Of a stretch of 64,000 nt of DNA, positions 29,304-43,480 are shown one piece after another. Origin of the DNA: Tubulanus polymorphus (lineage: Eukaryota; Animalia; Nemertea); NCBI RefSeq assembly GCF_964204645.1, contig NC_134035.1:12990451-13054450 (forward strand). Direction: 5' to 3'. The first letter of the stretch is position 1. Every line of letters begins with the position of its first letter. The notes beneath the pieces are model-generated. The model was not told the origin of the DNA and ran no database searches. It saw nothing but the letters and a program-made list of their open reading frames with translations. A program made the translations under genes and the position numbers.

Positions 29304-32300
29304 ATGGCGTTAAAACCAGTAAGTGATACGTATTTTTGGAGTTATTTATCGAGAATCTGCCTTTTAATGCTGGTGACAAGTTTTAAAAGTGTTTTGATAA
29401 ACGGTGCCGAACAGTCAGGGGAACGTTACGATGATCTGTACGTGTCCGGGGTTGACGCGTATAACGAGGAAAGATGGTTCGAATGCGTGACTCTGATGGT
29501 TCAAGCTCTGGATTCGTATCGCGAATATAAACGCGATTTAACGCGTTGTCGAGTGACCTGTAAGCGTAGACATGCCGTTCAGAAATTACCGTCGAACTCC
29601 GATCATGACAATCGTGATAGATATTTAGATTTGATATTTTATGAGAGCGTCACGCGTAATGCGGATTGTCTGCGGAGGTGTAAACGCCAGATGTTCGGCG
29701 AGGAGGCAGAACTGGTCACCACTGATCCTGAAATAACCGAGGCGTTTAACAATCTAGAACCGTATAATTATATTCAACTTTGTTTTCACAAGGTAAATTC
29801 TTTACAGTTTATTCTCTCCTAATAACCTAATCATTAATTGGATGGGCTTGTGAAAATATCCGAGTGTGAAACTAAACCACTGCGACTTATTCTCCCAAAG
29901 TTTGATTTTATTTTTGAATTTTTTTCTATTGCTGGAATAAGGACCATGGTATTCCAGGGAATTATGAATTATCTTTAGCATGGTAGCAACTCAGGACCGG
30001 AGAGAAGGGTAAAATAGCTAAAATGGTCTTAAATCTTAAGATGTAAGACCGCTTTTAGACATAAAAAGTTCAAGGCCATAGGGTTGAATTATATATATTT
30101 AATTCAATATTCTTTATGTTTGTCCAGTTTTCACATAAAGTATCGCTGATGTACGTAGAGAATCCCTAACTAATAAAATCATGGAGAAGAAGTCTGAAAA
30201 GTTTCTTTAGAATTCGACTATAACCTGATATATCAGGTTATAGATAGGCCTAATGTCTATTTCAACCTGACTTGAGAGCATTCCAGGTGGCCTAGCTCAG
30301 TCAGTTTTGGTAGTACATACCTGATTAAGGTCTTAGTAGAACCAGAAAGCACAGGCAGTCAACCTAAATCATCATTTTTTAATCCATTTGAAACTGTATT
30401 GAAGGATATCCAAAAAGTCTTCACTGAAATGGGTTAAATGAAGAGAAGTGACTCCATGATTTGAAAGTTTAACAATATGTTTCCATGCCTTCGTACCAAA
30501 CTTCAGTTGGTAGGCATGGAGACATATTGTTAATGCTCTCAAGTCAGGTTGAAATAGACATTAGTCATCTTCAGTCTAGCTTTAAGGAAACTTTTCGGAC
30601 TTCATCTTTCTCATTTTATTAGAATGAGATTCTCTATAAATCGTCATAAGATGGATTAGTGTTGAATATTGCTGATGTTTTGTTTTTAACAGTTAGGTGA
30701 GAATCGACATGCCGCAGCTGCTGCTTATACTTACTTCCTCGGCAATCCTAAACATCAAACAATGATACGCAATATTCATCAGTATCGAGAAATGTCGGAT
30801 GTGAGCGATTCTGATTTCATCAATATGGAGGCTTATAAACATCAGGTGATCATATTCATTTATTCATTCATATCTTAAAACTTGTATTCATGTTAGATTT
30901 ATGTGTTTACATGAAATTTTCAAAGTAAGAAGTTAAGAAGTAGAAGTTTAGTTAGGCCTACGCTGCTGGATGTTTAGTATTTCATCATGTTCTTGTACTC
31001 GATCAGATTCTTTGAAAACTCTTTCTAAATGATAAAAGCTTTTCAAGGTGCTCGAAACACCTTTGATTTGAACAAAATGCCTGATATGTTTTAAAACTCC
31101 TTCAATTTTGAGAGTAGACAATAAGAAATGTTTTGTCTAGTTTATAGTTGTACAGTATGTAATTATGCCTAAATTGATACAGTTGGAACTTTTATACCCA
31201 ATTAGACAGTTACAAAATTAGAAACCGAGTATAGGTAGTGTCTAAGATTGAAAAAAATGGTACAGTCAAACAATTGGTAAAGATAGATATTACGGTTATT
31301 ATTGGGATTTGAAAGTGATTGTGGACATTTCTCCTTAAAAACTCCTTATATCCAGGAATACATGGACTCTGTCTATTGTTTCTATTCTGGATTACGTTTC
31401 ATGCAAAGAAGAAACTCTCTGAGTTTCTGTCGTCGCTGCCCCTGATGTTGATCTCGTCCTAGTTCTAGTTCTACCTATTACTGGTCAACTTCAACATGCT
31501 GAAGATATTTGCCAGGTACTGACTTATGTTGTTAAATCAGTGAGTCCACGAGCACTGATATGTGTCCTACCTGAATAACATGGTTTCACAAGGATTCGAA
31601 CCCACAACCTCTCGGTTGAGAGTCAAACACCTTATCCACCATGCCACAGGACAGGACAGTTTCCTGAGCATAATCTCGTCCGTTTCAACGATCGCGTATT
31701 TTACGAAGGTTGTACAATCTGATGAAACTGTTTTTGCGTTTGTAAATATTCGCGATCAACGTTTCGCCGAATATCGAAATCTGATAAACGTCTTCTCCGT
31801 GGACGTCGATGAGGACGGTCGGTTTATCGAACCCGGCGTCCTCCGTCCAACGAACGTGTAACAATATCGCGCGATATCCTCTCTCGAAATCTATCGATAT
31901 TATCAGATTATTATCGTCGATTATCGCTAATCCGGGACTGTACGGTTTATTACGATTACCACCGGTGGTAATCTCGTAATCATTCAGGAATAGTTCGATA
32001 TCTGCGACGTCCGATAGTTCCCCGTGTTCCGACAGTTTGAACAGTTTCAAATCGGAACTCGAAATCGCGAACTTGTTCCGTCTGAATACGACGAGACCGG
32101 GCCACGTCGCTAGGTAACCGACGGGCAGACGGAATCTCACGACCGACGGGGAGCGACGATCGATTATTTGAATCTCATCGAGATTGAACCTCGTCGCGAA
32201 ACGATCGTCGAGTAAATAGAGATAATCTCCGTAAATCGATATCGTCGATTTGAGATTGTTGCAAATATCGGAGATATCGATCATTCGATAGCTGATCAGA

Positions 32301-35300
32301 TTTGGATGATCGTAACGTCTCAGGAGACATCTCGAATTCTGGGCCGTAAGAATTATCAATCGGAACTTTTTGGATTTCCGATCGTCGAAAGCGACGCCTA
32401 GTATTTTATCGTCACGGAAATCGTAGTCGTTCGCCGGGAATGTATTGTTGTCATCGTCGCCGCGAGATACGACCTTGAGAATCGAACGTTTCCATTCGGC
32501 AACGGCGACGTACGACGCGTCGCGATTCGCGGCGATCAACTGCGGGAAAAACCCGACCGAGTATCGAGCGATCGGATCGAGTTGAACACGATAGAACGAA
32601 CCCGGCGCCGCGAGTCGGGTTTTCCTGTATCGTAGATACCCGATACCGTCACGCCAGTCCGGTAAACTTCCCGCTATAAACTCAATTCGATTTCGTTCTT
32701 CATACTCCGCGTTCACATTCTCGTTCATCATTTCGTTCATCATTTCGGTTATAACGATATCTCCGATATTTATCTCGTTCAATCTCGCGATATCTCGATA
32801 GATTTTCTCGATTCTCGTTCTGCGTTCGTTCAGTATCGTGCGTCTGCTTTCTCTCCATCGCTTTAAACTCGATATTAAAGCGTTTTTATTCACCTCCAAC
32901 GATATCGATATCTCATCGACTTGATTCCTGATATCGGCGAGCGTTTTATTATAGCTTTCATCGATTCCTCGTATGATATCGTCCATCTGTGAAATATACT
33001 CCGGTATCTGGTGGTTCCTGCCCTCACCCTCAGCAGCAGCAGCAGCTGCTAGTAAAATTACCAACCATTTTACTGTAGCCATGATCAGATGATAGTATTG
33101 TGTCTAGTATCATAACCGGGTCAGTTATTTATCAAGTCCAAGATGTATGTCTATGGTATTTTCCGTGTCACATTCTTTTCCTGCCCATTGACTCTGATGT
33201 TTACATGTAGTTTTATCTTAAAATCTTCCAGGGTCCGCTGAAAAATGTTATATGCTAAGATTTTTAAATATCAGAAACTCCTTTAATTTGAGCAAACTCC
33301 TTTAAAACTCTTTCAATTTTGAGAAAAAGGCGAATAGAGATGTTCATCTAGTTTTTCGTTGTACAATAAACTACACCTCGATTGGTACAGTTGGGATTTG
33401 TGCTCATCCAATTAGGCAGTTGCTGAATTAGACAAAAATTTGACAGTAAACAGTTCCAACTTTGGAGGAGTCTACTGTAATTGAGATATGAAAGTGATGC
33501 AGACACTTCCTCGAAATATGAAATTGTCTCCTTAATAACTCCTCGAAATCTCTTTTTATCGAGGATTACCTGATCTACAGGTCAACCCTGAATGTTATGT
33601 TGATTGTCAACCGTGATTGTCAACGTCAACCCTGAATGTTATGTTGATCGTAGTGTAATATATTTTCAGCAATTGTATTCAAAAGGAAGTCGCGATTACT
33701 TAGAAGAGAAATGGTTAGACGTTATAGATCGAATGGAAGGAGCGATCGCTGGATTCATGGAACAATTAGAATCTTGCGAAGCAATGTGCGAAGAAACAAT
33801 AAATCATCGCAATAGAAATACTGACTTCGTCGTAGCCTTAGCAGGTATAACCGTTAGTCCAGTTGCACAGTCATGACTTACGTTTAAAAGTACATCTCAA
33901 TTTCTAAGACCAGTCTTAAGTTGTTTGATTGGTTGAAGAACTGGGTTGGTCTTAGACTGGTCTTAAGTCTCAGCCATGACTATGTGACTGGGCCATCGGT
34001 CTAGTTCATTAGTTCTTGGTTAAAACCTGATTCTTCAGGACCCAGTTCCACTGAGTTAGAGTCAACTCTGAGTTAAAAACAGTACATTTTCAATGAGTTA
34101 ACTCAGAGTTCAATCTTAATTTGGAACTGTGGAACTGGACCCAGAGTAAAAACAATATTGTACCGGTTTATTTTTCAGATCATTACAGCGATGTGATTAA
34201 ATGCTCGTCTAAATGTTCAAACAAACTATCAACGGTTCACGGAAAGTTTGTATTTGATTATATCCCTGATCATTATAACTACCTTCAATACGCTTATTAT
34301 AAACGTAAGTTCAAGTTTTATCCCAATGATAACTGATAACTGATGCTTACTATAAACTATTATCTCATGTCTGAAATGTGTTGTGTTTCAGTGAATGATT
34401 TCCGTAATGCCGCTCGATGCGTTCAGTCATATCTATTGTTTAAACCGACCGATGAGAATTTACTGCACAACAAAAAAATTTATCTCAGCATGCCGGGAGT
34501 GAGAGAAACTGATTTCAAACCGAGACCGGTAAGTAGTTGTAATGATGCTCTACTGATCATTGCTGCTGAATGAGACCACTGTTTTCTGTAGGGTTAAATG
34601 CAGCTTTTAAAAACCTTCAGAACTGAGCGCTTCACAATAAAGCCTCATTGAAGAGGAAACCACAATAAAGCCTCATTGAAGAGGAAATGTTTAAGTTGCC
34701 CCCTGATGATCTCCAGAGATGTTATAGTCCAGAGCAGGCCATCATTCTGCCTTTTTGGACAAGGAAAACCTCACAGACCTCAAAAAATCTTCTTTGAGAC
34801 TGGTCTGTTTTATCAATAGTAGGCCCTACTTGTTGAAGGATGTCTTGAGAGGTGTCTGATGATATGAAAGTGGTTTTTTGAGAAGTACATAATGTACTCG
34901 TGGAGAGTTGGTTTCCATGGACAAATGACTGCCGAATTCAATTTTAGAAAAAACCCACAATAAAACAAAGCAAAACTAATAGAGCAATTGTCAATTTGAT
35001 TCAAATGTAATGAGCCATTTTCACAACAGATTCATTTCTCAAGTACAGTTTTTACAACTGTCCATTTCTTTCTATGTACATAATGCTTAAAGTTTAGTAG
35101 ATTTGGGCTGAAAGTCAACACAATTCTTCATACAGACCGCCCTATAATTCAGTTTTATGAAACGATATTTTTCTCCTAATTTTAATGTTAACTGCTGTAT
35201 TTATATTTCAGGAGGCAGTTAGACTACACAATAGACACGCGGATGAGTCAGCTTTATTGAAATACTTAGAAACGCTGTATACAACATCTGAGTCGCGATA

Positions 35301-38300
35301 CTACAAACCAGTTAATGTAAGAAGCCTTCCTCTCAATATCCCTGAACTTTTAACTTTATGTTTTTACAGGCATAGAAATGTCTTATTCAATAGTCATTAA
35401 CCTCATACCTCAAATATGTAGTGCTTAAAACATGAACAATTCTCACATCTGTATCTGACACTGTGTCATTCAACCTGGTTTCACAAAGCTGTTACCACAA
35501 AGTTTAGATAGTGGAAATCCTATGTTCCCTATGAATGGGAGGTGGCTATGAAAATATTTCCATGAATTCTGAAAGTGTTTATTCATCGCCAAAAAAAATC
35601 ATTCACTTAAAAAATCTGAACGTGTAGTGTCCGGGTTATATAGGGAATTCTGACTGTTTTCTTGAAAATCAGTGAATTCGTATTTCCTATGTCTTGGTTA
35701 TTCTTGCTGGTGATGAGTGGCACAAGGAACCTCTTAAGAATGAACAGCCCTCAGGATATCTTAAGATTTAATCAGGGAATTTTCGGTCAAGAGTCTGGGA
35801 AATATTGGGAAATTTTAGATTCCTTGATTTGTAAGGCCCCCTGAAATTTGACTGTAAAGTCTAATTTCACTCACACCTGCGGAGCTGGGTCCGGACCAGA
35901 CCCTGATGTCCAATCGAAAAATTCTCTATGAATTAAATGTTTTTCAGATCCTAAAGAAGCCCGTTGACCTTGATGACCCGATTAAAATGTATTTATCATA
36001 TCTACGAACCCGCTATACGCAAAACGACAACAATGAAGAAGAATCGCTACGGAAACCGAATGTTCCGAACGTCGTATTCGAAACGAAAGAAGAAGATAAT
36101 TTTCTGTTTAAACATCAAATGAAAACGTTTGAACGTCGAGGGATCGAAACCGTGCGTAGAGACGCGGAACTCGGCGGAGATAAAAGAGTCGTCGTTAATG
36201 GATTATTATCTAGATATCAGTGCAAACAACTCATTCAAATAGCGCAGGTATGTATCAATGAAAATGTATCACTACCAAGCTACATGAAAAAAAGAGAATC
36301 TTAAGCCTGAAACTGATAGGTTTTGAACTGTTAACGAATATTGATATAAAAATACCAGCCCCGGGTAGTTGCTGTGTAGGTTAGCTGATTTCATAAGAAA
36401 TCACAAGTTTTTGCTTCTAGTGCATAGGTAAATCAGTGAACAAGTAGTTCTTTGTAGGTTAACTGATTTCATTTAGAAATCATATGCTTTCACTGCTGAT
36501 GCTTCATCAGGTATATTAGGTAGTACTGCATAGGTAAAATCTACTTGTTTTCCTACTAATAGAGCAGAAAGTTTTACTTTTCATGAAACTGTACGTTGAC
36601 CAAGTTTCACAGTTGTGAGGTAGTTTTGAGTTTAAGTAAATGTTTTCTGTTTTCAGTTGGGAGGAGTCAATAGTTTTGGACGTACGGATATACCGACTAA
36701 AGTAAACGATTTGCTGAAACTCGGAGTTGAATTGATACGAGATTTAAAACTAGATAAAGCTACTGAGGTATGGCGTTCAGTTCAACAATCCTCATAGAGT
36801 AGAATATGAGAAATTCACTCTTAATTCATTCATTTCATTTCTTGTTTCTCAAAGCTGGCAAATTTAGGCACGTTGAAATGGGACGCGACCGAAGCCTATA
36901 TGGAAATGGTTGAATTAGTTCGCAGTTACTTACAAACATATTACAACCGCACTGTGTTACACTTTCAAGATATACAACTCGTTTGTAGACAAGTCAAAAC
37001 CGGTAAAATCATCTTCTGAACTTTGATTCCAGGATCCAGTTCCACAGTTGTTCCAGGATCCAGTTCCACAGTTGTTCCAGGATCCAGTTCCACAGTTGTG
37101 AGTTAACCTTTGACTTGTTAGAACAGTTAGAATATTGAATATGAACCTCTGAGTTAACTCTAACTCTAACTCACAACTGTGAAACTGGAACCAGGGTTTG
37201 AAATACAGGAAAAGAAGTTCACCTGTAGAGTTAATCTTAACCCCAAACTGCGGAACTGTGTCCTCGATTTTCTGGTGGTTTCCAATGGATTTTAAAGAAC
37301 TCAGTATTATGTGTTTTAGATGTCAAAGTGCCGGAGTTAGTTAAACAGAAAACGTGCGTGCCACAAGAAGATGGAAGCTGCCGGAAATTAGACAATTCTC
37401 AATCGTCCCCGTTCAGGTTCGTTTGTTACTATAGTAAGATGAGAGACTACAACAATACAATCAGTTCAACAAGTGTCTCCAGATTATTTGAATTTTAAAT
37501 TCAAATCTTCTCGTTCTTGATTTAATGCAGGGCTGTTGTTTTTCTGAATAACGACTTCGAAGGAGATGGAAAGTTTTATTTCGACGATTCAAATCGTAAA
37601 GCCTCGGAACAGGTAAAAACCACGCGACATTCATTTAACAACTCGTCTTGGAAACGTATATTCGGGTATCTGAATTTTTGGGTCATTTTTGTAGGTATCA
37701 GTGGCTCCCTCTTGTGGAACTATGGTCGCGTATCGTGGTACTGATCAACATAGAATAGGAACGATTTCTTCGAATGATCGCTGCGTTTTATCGGTCGGTT
37801 TAACATCCGATCAAAACGATCGTAACACCGATTTTCTGACCGCAAAGCGCCACCTAGCAGTAGCTCGCATGAACGGATATGTTTTTTCGGAAGAGAAAAT
37901 TTTAGGCGATAAAATGGCGGAATTTAAACGAGAAGGTGTTTCCATATCTATGGATGAAACAGAACTGAAAGGTGAGATTCAAAATGTGATCGCTGTGTTT
38001 AAGAATCCAACGTTCAGCTGAACTACATGTAATAGTTAAATCCCAGTCACTAAATGGTTCAGGTTTTACTAATATGCTACATTTGCCGCAGATGACAAAA
38101 TGTCTGAATGTCTCTAATTTATAAAATTGCAACCTATTGTGGCTCCAACTGCCCCACCAAAATTCACCTGCTGCTTTAGTGAAGGTTTATTCATCCCGTC
38201 AGATCCGATGCAACCATGCAGTCAACTGTAGTTCAGATGTAACATGAATGTAATGATTTCAGGTGCCGAAAGAGTTGCTGCTGATGGTGTTATAACTGAT

Positions 38301-41300
38301 GAACAATGTAATAGTCTTGTTCAACTTGCTAAGGTATGTGTGTAACCTTAGTACATGTAGTAGACTCAAAGCAGAGTCTGTGTTACATGCCTTCCGATGA
38401 TAATTTTTAACTATGACTGTTTACTGGGTACTACTGCCCCCTGCCGCCAACTGGGCATCACTCAGCGCATTATTAAGAGGTTTGAAATTTGATTGGGAAT
38501 AACTTCGAAGAGGCTTGATCAATGGTTCTTACTGATTCAAAGGAAATCAGGGAATTCAGGCTCTTTTCCTGCAAATCTGGTAAATTTGAGTTTTTGGTAT
38601 CTTGTTGTTCTCGCTGGTGATGAGTGGCACAAGGAACCTCTTGATAAGAAACGGCCCTCACTGAGGATATCTTATAATTTAATCAGGGAATTTGAGTTTT
38701 TGGTGTCTTGTTGTTCTTGCTGGTGACGAGTGACACAAGGAACCTCTTGATAAGAAACAGCCCTCACTGAAGATATCATATAATTTAATTATTTAATCGG
38801 GAATTTGAATTATTGGAGTCTTGTTCTTGCTGTTGACAAATGGTAAAGGGAACTTCTTGATAAAAGACAGCCCTCACTGAGGATATCAAGGAAGGAGGAA
38901 TTTTAGATTCCCTGATCTGTAAGAACCATGATCTCAAGTTGTTGCCCCTGATAATTTATCTATAACTGTTTTATGATGTATATGTATTGAATTGTATTAT
39001 CAGATGGGAGGATTGACGAACGACGGCTACGACGATAAAACATCCGACAAAAAACATGTTTTATCTCCTCATTCGGCTTACGAACATTTCATCGGTGTAA
39101 ATATACGCCGAGCGTCACAGGTAGCGACAACACAAATCATCACTGAACTTTCTGTCGTTCCCAATGTTAACATTTTTATCACTTTTCTTTTGATTCCAAT
39201 ACAGAGCTGCCAATTGGTCGTGATTTTCAGCATCCGTTACTGTTTTTATAACTACAAATACTGATTTGATTTGTTTAACGCATTTACAGAAATATGAAAG
39301 ATGTTACTGTAGGTCTTACTGTTGATAACTGATTAATTTGAACATAAATATGAAAGATGTTACTGAGGGTCTTACTGTTGATTACTGATTAATTTGAACA
39401 GAAATATGAAAGATGTTACTGAGGGTCTTACTGTTGATTACTGATTAATTCGAACAGAAATATGAAAGATGTTACTGAGGGTCTTACTGTTGATTACTGA
39501 TTAATTCGAACAGAAATATGAAAGATGTTACTGAGGGTCTTACTGTTGATTATTGATTAATTCGAACATTTTCTTTCATATTTCAATGAAATGTTACTGA
39601 AAAAGATTATATTTGTTACTGATAGCAATCATCAGACGTTGGCAGCCCTGTAAATATGATAAAGGTGGTTGGAGAGAGATTGTGTTTAAATGAATTTAAA
39701 GCTCCCCACATAAAATGATATTACTCTTTTGAAATGCAGTTTTATGCGGTAATGAATTTTCCAGTGCTCTATAGTAGAGCAATAGTAGTCTATAAAAGCT
39801 CGTCATTATGAACACAGTCTGTCTATGAATAACCCTGCCATCATTTAACATTTTATTCTTCCTCTTGCTTATTTACGGGGAACCTTTGATTCAAATCCGG
39901 CAAAACTAAAGCTTTCAGAATCATAATGTAAGGGATCATTCATTTATTACGTACGCATAAAATTTGAATTTTTCAACCCCCCTCCCCCTCTGTATGCAAA
40001 ATCGGCCATTTTTTCATATACGTTAAGCATTACAGTACGCATTGCGCTGAAATCCTCCCCCTCCCCTAATGCGTACGTAATAAATGAATGACCCCTAATC
40101 AAAAAGCTAATTGAGATATATCTTGATGCTGATGGGCTTTGTGTTGACAGTTCCATAGGTCTGAGTAAGACGAAAATTATTTCATAGTTCACCAAATTTT
40201 TTCTCAGAACTGTGGAACCGAATTTTAACTTTTGGTTTCTATTTCAGCTTTTGATGTTGTAGTAACTTGTATCGGGAATTTGTGCACTTCTATCATTACA
40301 GTTGTTTTACTTGACCCAGTTCCACTGTTATAACGTTAGTCTTCTGGTTGAATCATTGATGAAACACTCCTTGAGTACATGTTGTAACAGAAATGTAAAA
40401 TCCTCCCACAGTCTGAGAATGAAAAGTCTGAGCTAGTAGTTTGATATTCATCTTCTGGGGCCACTTTTGGTCTTAAGTTTTGACTATGGAACCGGCTCCT
40501 GGGGCCAGTTGCACAGTCGTGACTTAGGTCCAAAAATGGCCCAATCTTAAGACAGGTCTTAAGTTGTTAGATTGGCTATAGAACTAAGTTGGTCTTAGAT
40601 TGGACTTAAGTCTTTAGCCCTGACTATGCCACCGGCCCCAGGAACTGGATAACAGTATTCCGAAGATGACGTTTAAACGTTGAATAAACTAATAGCTCAA
40701 TCAAACATTTCGGAAAATTTTTCCTCCTTATACAGAGTGGAATTTCATATTATGGTTGAAAATGATATAAACTGATAACCCTGGAACCGGGTTCGTGTTG
40801 TTAATTATTTCATGCAGTTCAGTTTGAGATTGTTTACTTTCATATTATTTTCGTTTGAATATTTTGTGCGTATTTTGTTTAATCAGAATGAAGCGCAGCT
40901 CGGTGACGGATACTTGCGCTCGTTGCTCGGTAATTTCGCCGATATTTCTCCGCATACGAACAATGAAATGTTTCAAGGTTTAACGATTGACGATGCCGGA
41001 GAGGTTCGTTGTTGACGGTTTCAGTTATTTGGCACGAATTTGAACGTTGTTCTTACGCATGTCACGCATGTCTTACGCATTACTGAAAATGTGAAATATA
41101 GTGAATTGTCAAAAAATCGCGGCAAATCATTGTGAATAGATAATTTGTACGTATCTGAAAATATCCGTCAAGGCTCAATTTATACGATTCTTGAGATACA
41201 AGATCCTCAATTGTCAGTATCCCGCCTCATAGTTTTACCTTATAGTGGTATCCCAGTTGCCTTTGATTTTTAAGTTTCTACTCGAGACAACATAGCAAGC

Positions 41301-43480
41301 AATGAACTCAAACGCTATCTAATTGAGATGTCAGAAATTACTGTCCCGTCGCGATAGTTTCATTTCAATTATTAGTATCCCTACGAAAAATTTAGTACGC
41401 CCCATATACGGGGATTCTACGTAAAATTGAGCCCTGTCAGTTATTAACTTTGCATTTGCATACTTAAACCGATACCACTTTCATTGATTCGATAGTAAAA
41501 TCTCAGTAGAGCTACAAATAATACAGTAGACTGTTCCTTACTTGCATCTCATTTGGTGCCCATTTTTGCTGTGAGGTGATACTCACAGATATTCTATTAC
41601 AACGATAGTTCTGAAATATGTATTTGAATTACCAGACAAGAGAGGAAGGAGTCTACTGAATGTATATTATATAGATTTACACAGCTTCATAGAATATTCT
41701 GTAGATGTTTCTTAGTAGATCATGCTTATTTACTATCTGTCTCAAGCATAATCAGCTTTTACTGTATATTGCACTCAGTGAGGTGGCCCGACCACCTCCT
41801 CGATGTAAATGTAAGTCACCGAAACAGTTTATATCTTAATGTAGACATCATTCTTCACAGATTACTATCGATCCATTAAAATTTTAATTTTTTCAAATTT
41901 TTCTTTGAACAGCTGGCGTCGAAAGGCGACGTCAAACCGGCGGACGTGAAATTATATTTGGACGCGAGTGAAAAAGCGAAAAACGTCGTGGAAACGTATT
42001 TTCAACTGAAGAGACCGTTATATTTTGATTTTACTCATTTAGTTTGTCGCACAGCCCTGAACGGTACGTTACGGAATTAGATCGAGGTATTCATCGATTG
42101 TTTGATTTCAATTTTGAGATAATTATCTGCATTTTCTTCTTGTGTTTGTATCATCCAGAAACGAATAAAGATCGCGATGATTTAAGTCACCCGATACATT
42201 CAGATAATTGTATCATACAAGAAGATTTCACTTGTCGTAAAGAATTACCAGCTTATACGCAACGTGATTACAGGTATTATAACTCACCACACCCGTGCAG
42301 GGCTGGGCCGGGCAGGGGGCGGTGGGGTGAATTACTGGCTCAAACACAACGAGATTACAGGTATTATAACTCACCACACCCGTGCAGGGCCGGGCCGGGT
42401 TTGGGGGGAGAATTACTGGCTCATACACATTACTCTTATTAAGAGAAAATGAATTACTAACACCAGACATTAGACATTTTATCAGCATACTTTCAAAAAC
42501 TGATCGTCCACACTTCACATGTGTTCAGTGCTTCACCTGAGACGCTTTTAATCGTAAATGAACTACAAACACCAGACATAAGACATTTGATCGTCCATAC
42601 TTCATTGTTGTGTTCAGTTCTTCACCTGAGATATCAGACATATTATCAACACATTTTCAACAACTAGTGGTGAATGCCTGAAGGGGGGTACAGCTACAAG
42701 GCTGAACTAGGGGTCTATCTAAGATTTGTGTATTCTATTTTTCAGTGCCTTGTTATACCTGAACGAGGATTTTGAGGGTGGAGAATTTATATTCGCTCAC
42801 AGAAATCTATCCACACAGGTAAATAATATAATAGTTAAACAATTTGTACTACAGGATGGCGCCACTTTCCACCCGTTTACACAAATCCCCTGAGTTTTCC
42901 CTGATTTTTCCATGTGATTTCACAAAATTCCTTGAGTCAATCTGAGAAATTTCTAGGATTGAAAATTAAGTCATTTTTCATCGAATCGCATATTGACAAT
43001 AAAATGCGTGGTCAATATCATACCAGAATTCCATAAGTCTTCGAGGTTTTTGGTAAGATTTGTCAAATTCCCTGAGTTCTGATTTTTCTAGATATTTCTG
43101 ATTCCTTGAGTTTTCCAGGTCAGTGGCCACCCTGTACTACTACAAAGTTATTATTTGGCTCAGTTTGTAATCTATCAGTTATATTCATCATTTGACAAAT
43201 TGTTGTGATTAAAAAAATCAAGGATTTATACTTTTCGTTGAAATATTTGTAGGTTCTGGTTAAACCGAAATGCGGACGTTTAGTCGGTTTTAACGCGGGG
43301 GTCTACCACGGAGTGAAGGCCGTATTGAAAGGTCAGAGATGCGCGATAGCGATGTGGTACACATTGGATCCGTATTACAAAGAACAAGCTCATTCAACCG
43401 CCAGAGAAAAACTCATCTCGATCGGTAAAACTAGCGGTACTGGCGACACCGGAGTTAACATCATTAAAGATGAACTTTAA
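29304..43480 (+). CDS. P3H1: Leprecan/prolyl 3-hydroxylase family protein with two dioxygenase domains, about 984 aa. Exons: 29304-29792, 30693-30845, 33670-33844, 34179-34304, 34392-34528, 35212-35316, 35948-36247, 36657-36767, 36855-37002, 37320-37416, 37531-37612, 37695-37971, 38263-38333, [39004-39120 or 40887-41003], 41913-42063, 42159-42273, 42746-42818, 43253-43480
   Basis: Signal peptide; CxxxC/TPR region (CRVTC, CLRRC, PYNYIQLCFHK, CEAMC, HYNYLQYAYYK); catalytic motifs FTHLVCRTA, SHPIHSDNC, RDYSALLYLNEDFEGGEF, KPKCGRLVGF, YHGVKAV..GQRCAIAMW; ends KDEL*. Symbol is family-level only (P3H1/2/3 co-orthologue). Confidence 0.92.
30150..30640. mobile_element. Foldback element in P3H intron 1
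   Basis: taatgtctatttcaacctgacttgagagcatt (about 30251) is inverted at about 30532-30563, with weaker complementarity further out. Confidence 0.6.
31581..31652 (-). mobile_element. tRNA-derived SINE head or tRNA pseudogene (CTC anticodon-like loop)
   Basis: Reverse strand GTCCTGTGGCATGGTGGATAAGG...CTCTCAA...GGGTTCGAATCC has A and B boxes; stems imperfect. Confidence 0.65.
31685..33082 (-). CDS. Nested intronless gene in P3H intron 2: signal peptide + coiled coil + probable beta-propeller (TRIM/NHL-like tail), 465 aa
   Basis: 1398-nt uninterrupted ORF with the host-like CpG-rich codon style; MATVKWLVILLAAAAAAEG signal; helical residues about 28-130; IEF...GIGYL linker; short beta strands with turns (YVAVAEW, ILGVAFD, ISIYGDYLYLLD, GLAIIDDNNLIIS). 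Confidence 0.85.
   Translation of the reverse strand: MATVKWLVILLAAAAAAEGEGRNHQIPEYISQMDDIIRGIDESYNKTLADIRNQVDEISISLEVNKNALISSLKRWRESRRTILNERRTRIEKIYRDIARLNEINIGDIVITEMMNEMMNENVNAEYEERNRIEFIAGSLPDWRDGIGYLRYRKTRLAAPGSFYRVQLDPIARYSVGFFPQLIAANRDASYVAVAEWKRSILKVVSRGDDDNNTFPANDYDFRDDKILGVAFDDRKSKKFRLIILTAQNSRCLLRRYDHPNLISYRMIDISDICNNLKSTISIYGDYLYLLDDRFATRFNLDEIQIIDRRSPSVVRFRLPVGYLATWPGLVVFRRNKFAISSSDLKLFKLSEHGELSDVADIELFLNDYEITTGGNRNKPYSPGLAIIDDNNLIISIDFERGYRAILLHVRWTEDAGFDKPTVLIDVHGEDVYQISIFGETLIANIYKRKNSFIRLYNLRKIRDR
37028..37194. mobile_element. CCAGTTCCACAGTTGTGAGTTA MITE with triplicated left end; relatives at about 24080-24280, 34035-34142, 63177-63250
   Basis: gatccagttccacagttgtgagttaa ... 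taactcacaactgtgaaactggaac; three tandem 24-bp copies of the left end. Confidence 0.75.
39202..39650. mobile_element. MITE (CAG[A/G]GCTGCCAA TIR, TA flanks) carrying an expanded 56-bp array (about 5 copies); single-unit copy at about 21216-21431
   Basis: cagagctgccaa ... ttggcagccctg termini; unit gaaatatgaaagatgttactgagggtcttactgttgattactgattaattcgaaca. Confidence 0.75.

What the first reader, a model, noticed from the sequence alone, without database searches (positions are those of the whole stretch)
35948..43480. Prolyl 3-hydroxylase with two tandem dioxygenase domains, the first apparently a pseudo-enzyme
Seen: the dioxygenase module occurs twice. Copy 1 runs ELGGDKRVVVNGLLSRYQCKQL...LHFQDIQLVCR...KQKTCVPQEDGSCRK...AVVFLNNDFEGDGKF...VAPSCGTMVAY..DQHRI..DRCVLSV. 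Copy 2 runs ELKGAERVAADGVITDEQCNSL...LYFDFTHLVCR...HSDNCIIQEDFTCRK...ALLYLNEDFEGGEF...VKPKCGRLVGF..YHGV..QRCAIAM. Five introns fall at equivalent positions with the same phases (0,0,1,2,0), which indicates an intragenic genomic duplication. Copy 1 has KQKT where copy 2 has HSDN, so it lacks two Fe ligands but keeps the Cys pairs, distal His and the RC motif. Known: vertebrate P3H1-3 have one such domain and P3H1 works with the non-catalytic CRTAP and cyclophilin B. Inference: a built-in inactive domain acting as a collagen-binding, chaperone or regulatory module.
Basis: partly seen in the sequence, partly recalled or inferred. Interest (0 to 1): 0.85.

Follow-up and report, generated by a model that had tools for sequence, protein, structure and literature searches.

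The report
Ribbon-worm collagen hydroxylase with dead extra domain
This ribbon-worm gene for a collagen prolyl 3-hydroxylase really does carry two copies of its enzyme domain, the first lacking its iron-binding residues, and the same layout is old and widespread in molluscs and ribbon worms, sits unremarked in public gene predictions, and I found no paper describing it.

Summary
The window holds one 19-exon leprecan/P3H gene (29304-43480, + strand). My hand-built model is 100% identical to RefSeq predictions for Tubulanus polymorphus (XP_074659758-60).

The protein has a leprecan TPR region, then dioxygenase domain D1, a linker, catalytic domain D2 and a KDEL end. D1 and D2 align at 28% identity (E 1e-31). 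They share five intron positions and phases.

D1 has Lys-x-Lys where D2 has the iron-binding His-x-Asp. It keeps the distal His, both 2OG-binding Arg and the Cys. It is predicted to fold like the human P3H1 catalytic domain.

The architecture is not specific to this lineage. Every mollusc protein fetched (gastropods, bivalves, cephalopods) and the nemertean Lineus has an HxD-less first domain plus an intact second one. The Lingula protein has two intact-looking domains. The one annelid, one bryozoan and the deuterostome proteins fetched have a single domain.

Between close species D1 is about as conserved as the TPR region, so it is a maintained non-catalytic domain. Its role (binding or scaffold, as proposed for the OGFOD1/Tpa1 dead domain) is inferred only.

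No paper describing the layout was found. Verdict: a real, ancient, undescribed variant of a known enzyme family, of moderate interest. Another note of this scan (s1-496628) covers the exon pair inside the gene.

The parts
29304..29792 (+). Exon 1: start codon, hydrophobic signal-like N-terminus and the start of the leprecan TPR region. RefSeq starts at the in-frame ATG at 29367.
   Evidence: ORF and donor GT. The RefSeq protein P0043 matches from 29367. PF23557 covers residues 22-324 of P0043.
30693..30845 (+). Exon 2, TPR region (AAAAAYTYF motif)
33670..33844 (+). Exon 3, TPR region
34179..34304 (+). Exon 4, TPR region (HYNYLQYAYYK)
34392..34528 (+). Exon 5, end of the TPR region
35212..35316 (+). 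Exon 6, helix after the TPR region
   Evidence: The model is identical to RefSeq only when this exon is included.
35948..36247 (+). Exon 7: low-complexity spacer, then the start of D1 (ELGGDKRVVVNG...IAQ); ends in phase 0
36657..36767 (+). Exon 8, D1. Counterpart of the H exons of D2. The GDGY..SPH motif is lost here.
   Evidence: Low pLDDT at residues 482-497 of the full-length model.
36855..37002 (+). Exon 9, D1 (..LHFQDIQLVCRQ; keeps the Arg equivalent to human P3H1 R569); ends in phase 1
   Evidence: An X2 contig covers exactly this exon (record 9). R569 is taken from PMC11381544.
37320..37416 (+). Exon 10, D1. K-Q-K-T-C (37343-37357) stands in place of H-x-D-N-C, so the two iron ligands are replaced by Lys. 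The CxxQEDGSC Cys pair is kept. Ends in phase 2.
37531..37612 (+). Exon 11, D1 (AVVFLNNDFEGDGKFYF); ends in phase 0
37695..37971 (+). Exon 12: end of D1 (CG; distal His at 37749; Arg-Cys at 37779), then the about 50-residue linker that repeats the pre-D1 segment (FKREGVSISMDETELKG); ends in phase 1
   Evidence: X2 contig record 10 stops 2 bases short of this exon's donor (37969 against 37971).
38263..38333 (+). Exon 13: start of D2 (AERVAADGVITDEQCNSLVQLAK)
39004..39120 (+). Exon 14a (H1), 117 nt, phase 0-0, D2 segment with GY..SPH; used in RefSeq isoform X2
40887..41003 (+). Exon 14b (H2), 117 nt, phase 0-0, homologous alternative to H1; used in RefSeq isoform X3 (X1 has both)
41913..42063 (+). 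Exon 15, D2 (..LYFDFTHLVCRTALN); ends in phase 1
   Evidence: X2 contig record 16 stops at 42063.
42159..42273 (+). Exon 16, D2: LSHPIHSDNC with iron ligands His 42197 and Asp 42203; ends in phase 2
42746..42818 (+). Exon 17, D2 (ALLYLNEDFEGGEFIF); ends in phase 0
43253..43480 (+). Exon 18: end of D2 (KCGR; distal His 43307; 2OG-binding Arg 43337), C-terminal tail, KDEL at 43466-43477, stop TAA at 43478-43480
   Evidence: (PF13640, E 8e-4 on the exon alone)

Best explanation
This is the only detectable leprecan/P3H gene of the nemertean Tubulanus polymorphus.

It encodes an ER-retained (KDEL) collagen prolyl 3-hydroxylase built as TPR region - D1 - linker - D2. D2 has every catalytic residue known from human P3H1 and is the enzyme. 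D1 arose by tandem duplication of the block of exons that encodes the dioxygenase domain. It lost the His-x-Asp iron ligands but has been kept as a folded, disulfide-bearing double-stranded beta-helix for a very long time.

Shown: the architecture, the duplication, the loss of the ligands, the predicted fold, the conservation and the taxonomic spread.

Inferred: D1 cannot hydroxylate. It most likely acts as a built-in non-catalytic module that binds the collagen chain or a partner, or positions D2. This parallels what is proposed for the metal-free second domain of the ribosomal prolyl 3-hydroxylase OGFOD1/Tpa1. It may take over part of what the separate non-catalytic partners do in vertebrates, since no CRTAP-like gene was found in this genome.
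For: - Gene model: the hand-built model equals RefSeq XP_074659759 and XP_074659760 over all 963 residues.
- Domains: PF23557 TPR at E 3e-74 and PF13640 in D2. D1 against D2 gives E 1e-31.
- Introns: positions and phases are shared between the copies.
- Active site: D1 has K-Q-K for H-x-D and keeps the distal His, both Arg and the Cys. The residue roles come from PMC11381544.
- Fold: the D1 model has pLDDT 85.9 and pTM 0.86. Its best PDB match is human P3H1 8k0m_A, E 2e-14, TMq 0.71.
- Spread: an HxD-less first domain plus an intact second domain in every mollusc protein fetched and in Lineus.
- Transcripts: mRNA-sized contigs in other organisms encode both domains, for example 894 aa on 3413 nt and 984 aa on 3506 nt.
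- Constraint: D1 identity is about that of the TPR region and well above the spacer and linker in eight close species pairs.
- Splicing in this animal: X2 contigs stop within 0-2 bases of exon ends, and their lengths fit the chains exon 9-10-11-12 and exon 12-13.
- Partners: only one leprecan locus was found in the 268-Mb genome.
- Precedent: OGFOD1/Tpa1 is a tandem beta-helix protein whose second domain lacks a metal site (PMC4396695).
Against: - No experiment or binding data exists for any D1.
- The full-length AF2 model has pTM 0.45, so nothing can be said about how D1 packs against D2 or the TPR region.
- D1 keeps the distal His and both 2OG-contacting Arg in Tubulanus, so some ligand binding is not excluded.
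- The transcript evidence in Tubulanus is indirect: gene predictions, plus contig-length arithmetic on a run whose type is not on record. The splice-joint rows were crowded out of the read-laying table by repeats.
- The absence of CRTAP rests on exon-wise searches of limited sensitivity.
Confidence: 0.7

Rival explanations
1. D1 is a functionless relic of a duplication, on its way to being lost or spliced out.
For: D1 diverges faster than D2 at deep levels, 23-34% against 47-60% identity. Pfam no longer detects D1 in Tubulanus. The HxD loop is degenerate and of variable length.
Against: D1 is kept in frame in every mollusc protein fetched and in two nemerteans. Its Cys, Gly and Arg-Cys positions are invariant. 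Between close species it is as conserved as the TPR region and more than the spacer and linker. It is confidently predicted to fold.
Confidence: 0.07
2. D1 is still a ligand-binding or even catalytic domain with a non-canonical site, for example a 2OG or succinate sensor.
For: Tubulanus D1 keeps the distal His and both Arg that hold the 2OG 5-carboxylate in human P3H1. The Arg-Cys Arg is nearly invariant in all D1. The Lingula first domain is fully intact.
Against: No substitute metal ligands are conserved at the HxD position: K/K, L/E, P/D, F/E, deletions and others. The distal His is itself lost in cephalopods, Solemya and some mussels. The LVCR Arg is not conserved in mollusc D1. In human P3H1, H587A or D589A strongly reduces activity (PMC11381544).
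Confidence: 0.1
3. The two domains are not normally in one protein. Either the D1 exons are skipped, or the locus is two genes or two transcripts.
For: Splicing exon 7 to exon 14a or 14b would be in frame and give a canonical one-domain P3H. X2 contigs also cover introns between 40615 and 41913. No run on record as RNA was available.
Against: All three RefSeq isoforms contain D1 and D2. There is no stop, start or signal peptide between the domains, and only one KDEL, at the end. An X2 contig of 1990 nt contains exon 9, and the length of its downstream part equals 1+97+82+68 nt, ending just before a SNP at 37763. A 250-nt contig equals the end of exon 12 plus all of exon 13. Transcript-sized contigs of other species encode both domains.
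Confidence: 0.03
4. The nemertean two-domain layout arose independently of the mollusc one (convergent duplications), so there was no single ancient event.
For: The AU test does not reject a tree with nemertean D1 and D2 together (p 0.20). Lingula (p 0.47) and the unknown organism of P0029 (its two domains are sisters) show that such duplications can recur. Lineus D1 scores no better on the D1 profile than on the D2 profile.
Against: The best tree puts all first domains except those of P0029 on one side of a branch (SH-aLRT 92). The boundaries of the duplicated unit, the linker and the same loss of the LSHPxHxDN segment are shared. So is the D1-only CxPQEDGSC motif, in Tubulanus and many molluscs.
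Confidence: 0.25

Closest known systems
Vertebrate collagen prolyl 3-hydroxylases P3H1-3 (leprecan family; human P3H1 in PDB 8k0e/8k0m)
   Same: Leprecan TPR N-terminal region. C-terminal 2OG/Fe(II) dioxygenase with His-x-Asp...His plus two Arg. Conserved Cys. KDEL-type ER retention. phmmer to 8k0e_A gives E 2e-120.
   Different: Vertebrate, amphioxus, hemichordate, echinoderm, tunicate, Owenia and Watersipora proteins have one dioxygenase domain. This protein has an extra, iron-ligand-less copy plus a linker inserted between the TPR region and the catalytic domain.
OGFOD1 / Tpa1p / Ofd1 (ribosomal protein uS12 prolyl 3-hydroxylases)
   Same: One chain with two double-stranded beta-helix domains, one catalytic and one without a metal site. 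The dead domain is thought to have come from a duplication and to serve in partner or substrate binding (PMC4396695).
   Different: Not the same family: the Pfam scan of P0043 at E up to 0.01 listed only PF23557, PF13640 and PF23558, and no OGFOD1-family model. The order is reversed, with the dead domain first. The two domains here are still 28% identical, against 12% in OGFOD1. The substrate is presumably collagen in the ER, not the ribosome.
CRTAP and SC65/P3H4 (non-catalytic leprecans of vertebrates)
   Same: Non-catalytic members of the same system that partner a P3H. CRTAP pairs with the P3H1 TPR region and leaves room for cyclophilin B facing the active site (PMC11381544).
   Different: They are separate proteins that lack any dioxygenase domain. 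Here the non-catalytic element is a dead dioxygenase domain in the same chain, and no CRTAP-like locus was found in the genome.
Predicted two-domain 'prolyl 3-hydroxylase 1/2-like' proteins of molluscs and Lineus (e.g. XP_071116185 Haliotis, XP_060578762 Ruditapes, XP_029636108 Octopus, XP_064634488 Lineus)
   Same: Same TPR-D1-linker-D2 order. D1 lacks HxD. Cys, Gly and Arg-Cys are conserved. They also have paired alternative H exons.
   Different: D1 is only 23-28% identical to the Tubulanus D1. Mollusc D1 lacks about 18 residues that Tubulanus keeps in exon 8.

Membership tests
Leprecan / collagen prolyl 3-hydroxylase (P3H) family | N-terminal leprecan TPR-like region | tested here: met
   PF23557 at E 3.1e-74, residues 22-324 of P0043, which equals the window's protein
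Leprecan / collagen prolyl 3-hydroxylase (P3H) family | C-terminal 2OG/Fe(II) dioxygenase domain with His-x-Asp...His and the 2OG-binding Arg residues | tested here: met
   D2 has PF13640 at E 7.6e-14. It has LSHPIHSDNC, YHGV, QRC and LVCR. The residue roles are from PMC11381544.
Leprecan / collagen prolyl 3-hydroxylase (P3H) family | ER residence: signal peptide and C-terminal KDEL-type signal | tested here: inconclusive
   KDEL is present at 43466-43477. The N-terminus is hydrophobic, but no signal-peptide predictor was available and the start codon is ambiguous (29304 or 29367).
Leprecan / collagen prolyl 3-hydroxylase (P3H) family | Prolyl 3-hydroxylation of collagen X-position prolines | not testable with these tools
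   Needs an enzyme assay.
Active 2OG/Fe(II) oxygenase (asked of D1 alone) | His-x-Asp/Glu...His facial triad | tested here: not met
   D1 has Lys 37343 and Lys 37349 at the His and Asp positions. Only the distal His (37749) remains.
Active 2OG/Fe(II) oxygenase (asked of D1 alone) | Double-stranded beta-helix fold | tested here: met
   AF2 model with pLDDT 85.9 and pTM 0.86. The best Foldseek match is P3H1 8k0m_A, E 2.4e-14, followed by other 2OG oxygenases.
OGFOD1/Tpa1-type tandem beta-helix prolyl hydroxylases | Two beta-helix domains in one chain, one of them without a metal site | tested here: met
   definition from PMC4396695
OGFOD1/Tpa1-type tandem beta-helix prolyl hydroxylases | Sequence membership, and catalytic domain first with the dead domain second | tested here: not met
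   No OGFOD1-family Pfam hit was listed for P0043. The order is dead domain first, catalytic second. This is analogous, not homologous as a tandem.
CRTAP/P3H4 non-catalytic leprecans | TPR region only, no dioxygenase domain | tested here: not met
   Two dioxygenase-type domains are present.

The most novel reading that the evidence does not exclude
In animals that have one leprecan gene and no CRTAP, the dead domain D1 is the cis-encoded counterpart of the vertebrate non-catalytic partners. In the full-length enzyme it would sit opposite the active site of D2, in a place like that of cyclophilin B or CRTAP in the human complex, and hold the collagen chain. In addition, conserved truncated isoforms that stop right after the H exon (TPR + D1, no catalytic core) would act as a CRTAP-like non-catalytic subunit. 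Such isoforms are predicted in Haliotis, Patella and Lingula, and read-through after exon 14b is possible in Tubulanus. That would make this an independent, lophotrochozoan solution to the 'active subunit plus inactive paralogue' design of the P3H complex.
Probability: 0.15. Interest if true: 0.65.

Novelty: new variant of a known kind. Interest (0 to 1): 0.45.

Why it matters
Collagen prolyl 3-hydroxylation is essential in vertebrates; defects in P3H1, CRTAP or PPIB cause recessive osteogenesis imperfecta. It depends on a catalytic subunit working with non-catalytic relatives.

A 2025 review states that flies and worms lack P3H and that the enzyme's evolutionary origin still needs study (PMC7619536). 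The data here show that a large part of the Lophotrochozoa uses a P3H with a conserved, catalytically dead second dioxygenase domain in the same chain.

This gives a natural system for asking what a non-catalytic module contributes to collagen P3H function. It is also a dated example of pseudo-enzyme domain birth by exon-block duplication. It is not a new kind of system, and it is already present, unremarked, in public gene predictions.

Tried and rejected
**Exon-by-exon Pfam scan.** Only the last D2 exon gave a weak 2OG hit. The exons are too short, so this says nothing about D1.

**RNA evidence.**
- No run on record as RNA holds the locus.
- X4, the guessed RNA run, has nothing on the gene.
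- The single read-laying run listed repeat-derived joints instead of splice joints. Splicing was inferred only from where contigs stop and from their lengths.

**Protein searches.**
- phmmer with exon 12 found only 3 cluster representatives.
- The word-index search with the Haliotis D1 found only Haliotis. Both show that D1 diverges too fast for simple searches.
- The taxonomic survey therefore rests on the 120 best of 1022 D2 hits. The annelid and bryozoan 'single-domain' states each rest on one protein.

**Origin of the duplication.** AU tests could not settle one against several origins (p 0.20 and 0.47).

**Domain packing.** The full-length AF2 model has pTM 0.45 and no coordinates were available, so no statement on packing is made.

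**CRTAP.** Searches of the genome with PF23557 and with a sea-urchin 'cartilage-associated protein' sequence hit only this gene.

**Literature.** Four searches found no description of two-domain P3Hs, but the tool ranks loosely and covers open-access papers only.

The joined model was built only inside local scripts from window.fa. Whole-protein steps used the identical database protein P0043.
Full report
**What is there**

The finding lies in the 3' half of one + strand gene. I worked out the exons by hand from open frames and AG/GT borders. There are 19 exons from ATG 29304 (or 29367) to TAA 43478-43480, counting the two alternative 117-nt exons separately.

Exon-by-exon searches by reference came first. 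Pfam on ten exon translations gave only a weak 2OG hit on the last exon. phmmer with exon 12 (window:37695-37970) against 1.84 billion representatives gave three hits. All three were 846-919 residues long with two matched stretches. They are predicted P3H-like proteins of Ruditapes, Solemya and Haliotis.

A later search returned 'prolyl 3-hydroxylase 2-like' isoforms of Tubulanus polymorphus. My two models are identical over all 963 residues to XP_074659759 (uses exon 14a) and XP_074659760 (uses exon 14b). XP_074659758 has both exons. This fixes the organism, in agreement with an earlier scan note. It also gave a database id (P0043) for all whole-protein steps.

The joined spliced model was made only inside local scripts from window.fa.

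**Check of the observation**

- All quoted motifs are present.
- D1 (P0043 448-660) and D2 (710-932) align at 28% identity over 255 residues, E 1e-31.
- The five introns inside each copy have phases 0,0,1,2,0 and fall on the same aligned residues. For the third intron this holds if the arbitrary BLAST gap is moved: both lie 5 codons after the LVCR Arg.
- The homologous last exons even carry the distal His and the Arg-Cys at the same offsets, residues 19 and 29-30.
- The duplicated unit starts before the ELxG..R..DG motif. The linker after D1 repeats the segment that precedes D1.
- The one intron without a counterpart (37972-38262, phase 1) lies near the start of the second copy.

**Active sites**

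In human P3H1 the iron ligands are H587, D589 and H659. R569 and R669 hold the 5-carboxylate of 2OG, and alanine mutants at H587, D589, H659 and R669 show strongly reduced activity (PMC11381544).

D2 has all five residues. D1 has Lys and Lys for H587 and D589, and keeps the other three as well as the Cys.

Pfam no longer sees D1 in Tubulanus. However, an AF2 model of D1 built on 47 D1 sequences is confident (pLDDT 85.9, pTM 0.86). Its best PDB match is the human P3H1 catalytic domain (8k0m_A, E 2.4e-14, TMq 0.71), followed by other 2OG oxygenases.

**One transcript?**

- All three RefSeq isoforms hold both domains.
- There is no stop, start or second signal between the domains, and only one KDEL.
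- No run on record as RNA was offered.
- Run X2 (type not on record) has contigs that stop within 0-2 bases of exon borders, which genomic DNA contigs would not do.
 - Record 9 (1990 nt) covers exon 9 at its positions 249-397. The 248 nt beyond equal 1+97+82+68, that is exons 10 and 11 and exon 12 up to 37762, just before a SNP at 37763 seen in the same sample.
 - Record 10 (250 nt) is 37793-37969 plus 73 nt, which equals the last 2 nt of exon 12 plus the 71 nt of exon 13.
 - Record 16 stops at 42063, the exon 15 donor, and runs on for 277 nt.
- This is arithmetic inference. The joint rows themselves were crowded out by repeats.
- In other organisms, mRNA-sized contigs encode both domains: 894 aa on 3413 nt, 974 on 2999, 984 on 3506, 928 on 4732, 857 on 2886.

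**Spread**

Local D1 and D2 profiles run over the 157 fetched proteins, together with motif extraction, show the following.

| Group | Domains |
|---|---|
| Every gastropod, bivalve and cephalopod protein fetched; nemerteans Tubulanus and Lineus | First domain without the LSHPxHxDN segment, plus an intact second domain |
| Lingula (brachiopod) | Two domains, both with HxD |
| Unknown metagenomic protein P0029 | Two intact domains that are sisters in the tree |
| Owenia (annelid), Watersipora (bryozoan), amphioxus, hemichordates, echinoderms, tunicates, vertebrates | One domain |

The long echinoderm proteins have inserts, not a second domain.

Across D1 the Cys, the CG Gly and the Arg-Cys are invariant or nearly so. 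The distal His is mostly kept, but is lost in cephalopods, Solemya and some mussels. No replacement metal ligands are conserved.

**Origin**

A maximum-likelihood tree of 73 domains gives:
- mollusc D1 as one clade (SH-aLRT 99);
- the two nemertean D1 as a pair (91);
- all first domains except those of P0029 on one side of a branch (92), attached among protostome sequences and not among the deuterostomes.

This fits one duplication before molluscs and nemerteans split. But D1 branches are long. AU tests do not reject an independent duplication in nemerteans (p 0.20) or in Lingula (p 0.47). The question of one origin or several is therefore open.

**Constraint**

In eight close species pairs, D1 identity tracks that of the TPR region. 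Examples for D1 against TPR are 88/88, 91/93, 80/65, 73/74, 72/70 and 62/58 %. D1 identity exceeds that of the spacer in all eight pairs and that of the linker in six of them. D2 is the most conserved region. D1 is therefore maintained, not decaying. Coding sequences for dN/dS were not available.

**Context**

Searches of the 268-Mb genome with PF23557, with a sea-urchin 'cartilage-associated protein' sequence and with D2 hit only this locus. So this appears to be the only leprecan gene, and no CRTAP-like gene is detectable, within the limits of exon-wise search.

In the human complex the P3H1 TPR region and CRTAP form a pseudo-symmetric base. Cyclophilin B occupies the place left free by CRTAP's missing catalytic domain and faces the P3H1 active site. 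How D1 fits into such an assembly cannot be said. The full-length AF2 model has good domains (mean pLDDT 80.8) but pTM 0.45.

**Mechanism proposed**

D2 is the hydroxylase. D1 is a non-catalytic beta-helix kept for binding or scaffolding. The closest precedent is OGFOD1/Tpa1, a prolyl 3-hydroxylase with a second, metal-free beta-helix domain. That domain is thought to come from a duplication and to bind partners (PMC4396695). The resemblance is analogous only: the order is reversed, no OGFOD1-family Pfam hit was listed for P0043, and the substrate differs.

**Novelty**

The gene and its relatives are already in RefSeq under generic names. I found no paper that notes the second domain. A 2025 review treats invertebrate P3H as essentially uncharacterised.

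Noticed in passing
39004-39120 and 40887-41003: Two homologous 117-nt, phase 0-0 exons encode the GY..SPH segment of D2. RefSeq isoforms X2 and X3 use one each, and X1 uses both. Isoform sets with the same split D2 match exist in Haliotis, Lineus, Octopus, Ruditapes, Ostrea, Mytilus and the one-domain bryozoan Watersipora, so the exon pair looks old. The scan's note s1-496628 covers the same pair.
   Followed up: partly
41004-41912 (intron after exon 14b); P0007, P0026, P0138, P0142: Predicted isoforms of Haliotis (X4), Patella vulgata (X2) and Lingula (X7, X8) all end a few residues after the H exon, giving TPR + first domain without the catalytic core of the second domain. (In Lingula the first domain is itself intact.) In Tubulanus, read-through after exon 14b would add VRC and stop. 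An X2 contig covers 40615-41646 without a break. This may be a conserved non-catalytic isoform, or only unspliced RNA.
   Followed up: partly
29304-29369: An in-frame ATG lies 21 codons upstream of the RefSeq start (29367). It would give a longer N-terminus that looks more like a signal peptide. Which start is used is unknown.
   Followed up: no
G000, whole genome (window = C11:12990451-13054450): Only one leprecan-family locus was found in the 268-Mb assembly. No CRTAP-like gene and no second P3H gene were found at the sensitivity of exon-wise searches.
   Followed up: partly
P0030/P0140 (Lingula anatina), P0029 (unknown, JGI metagenome contig of 2036 nt): These are two-domain P3H-like proteins in which both domains keep HxD...H. 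In P0029 the two domains are each other's closest relatives, which points to a separate, younger duplication.
   Followed up: partly
36900-37300, 38500-38900, 39300-39700, 39900-40100, 40500-40700: Intron stretches with summed contig depth in the thousands to hundreds of thousands in run X1, against about 32 for unique sequence. These are high-copy repeats. Around 37020-37103 the translation shows a short tandem repeat with an 8-codon unit.
   Followed up: no
run X2: The run's type is not on record. Its contigs stop within 0-2 bases of exon borders and vary 20-fold in depth, so it behaves like RNA with much unspliced material. SNPs seen in the same sample: 37763 is synonymous and 37792 changes Ser to Leu (both in the D1 part of exon 12); 41915 and 41930 in exon 15 are synonymous.
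   Followed up: partly
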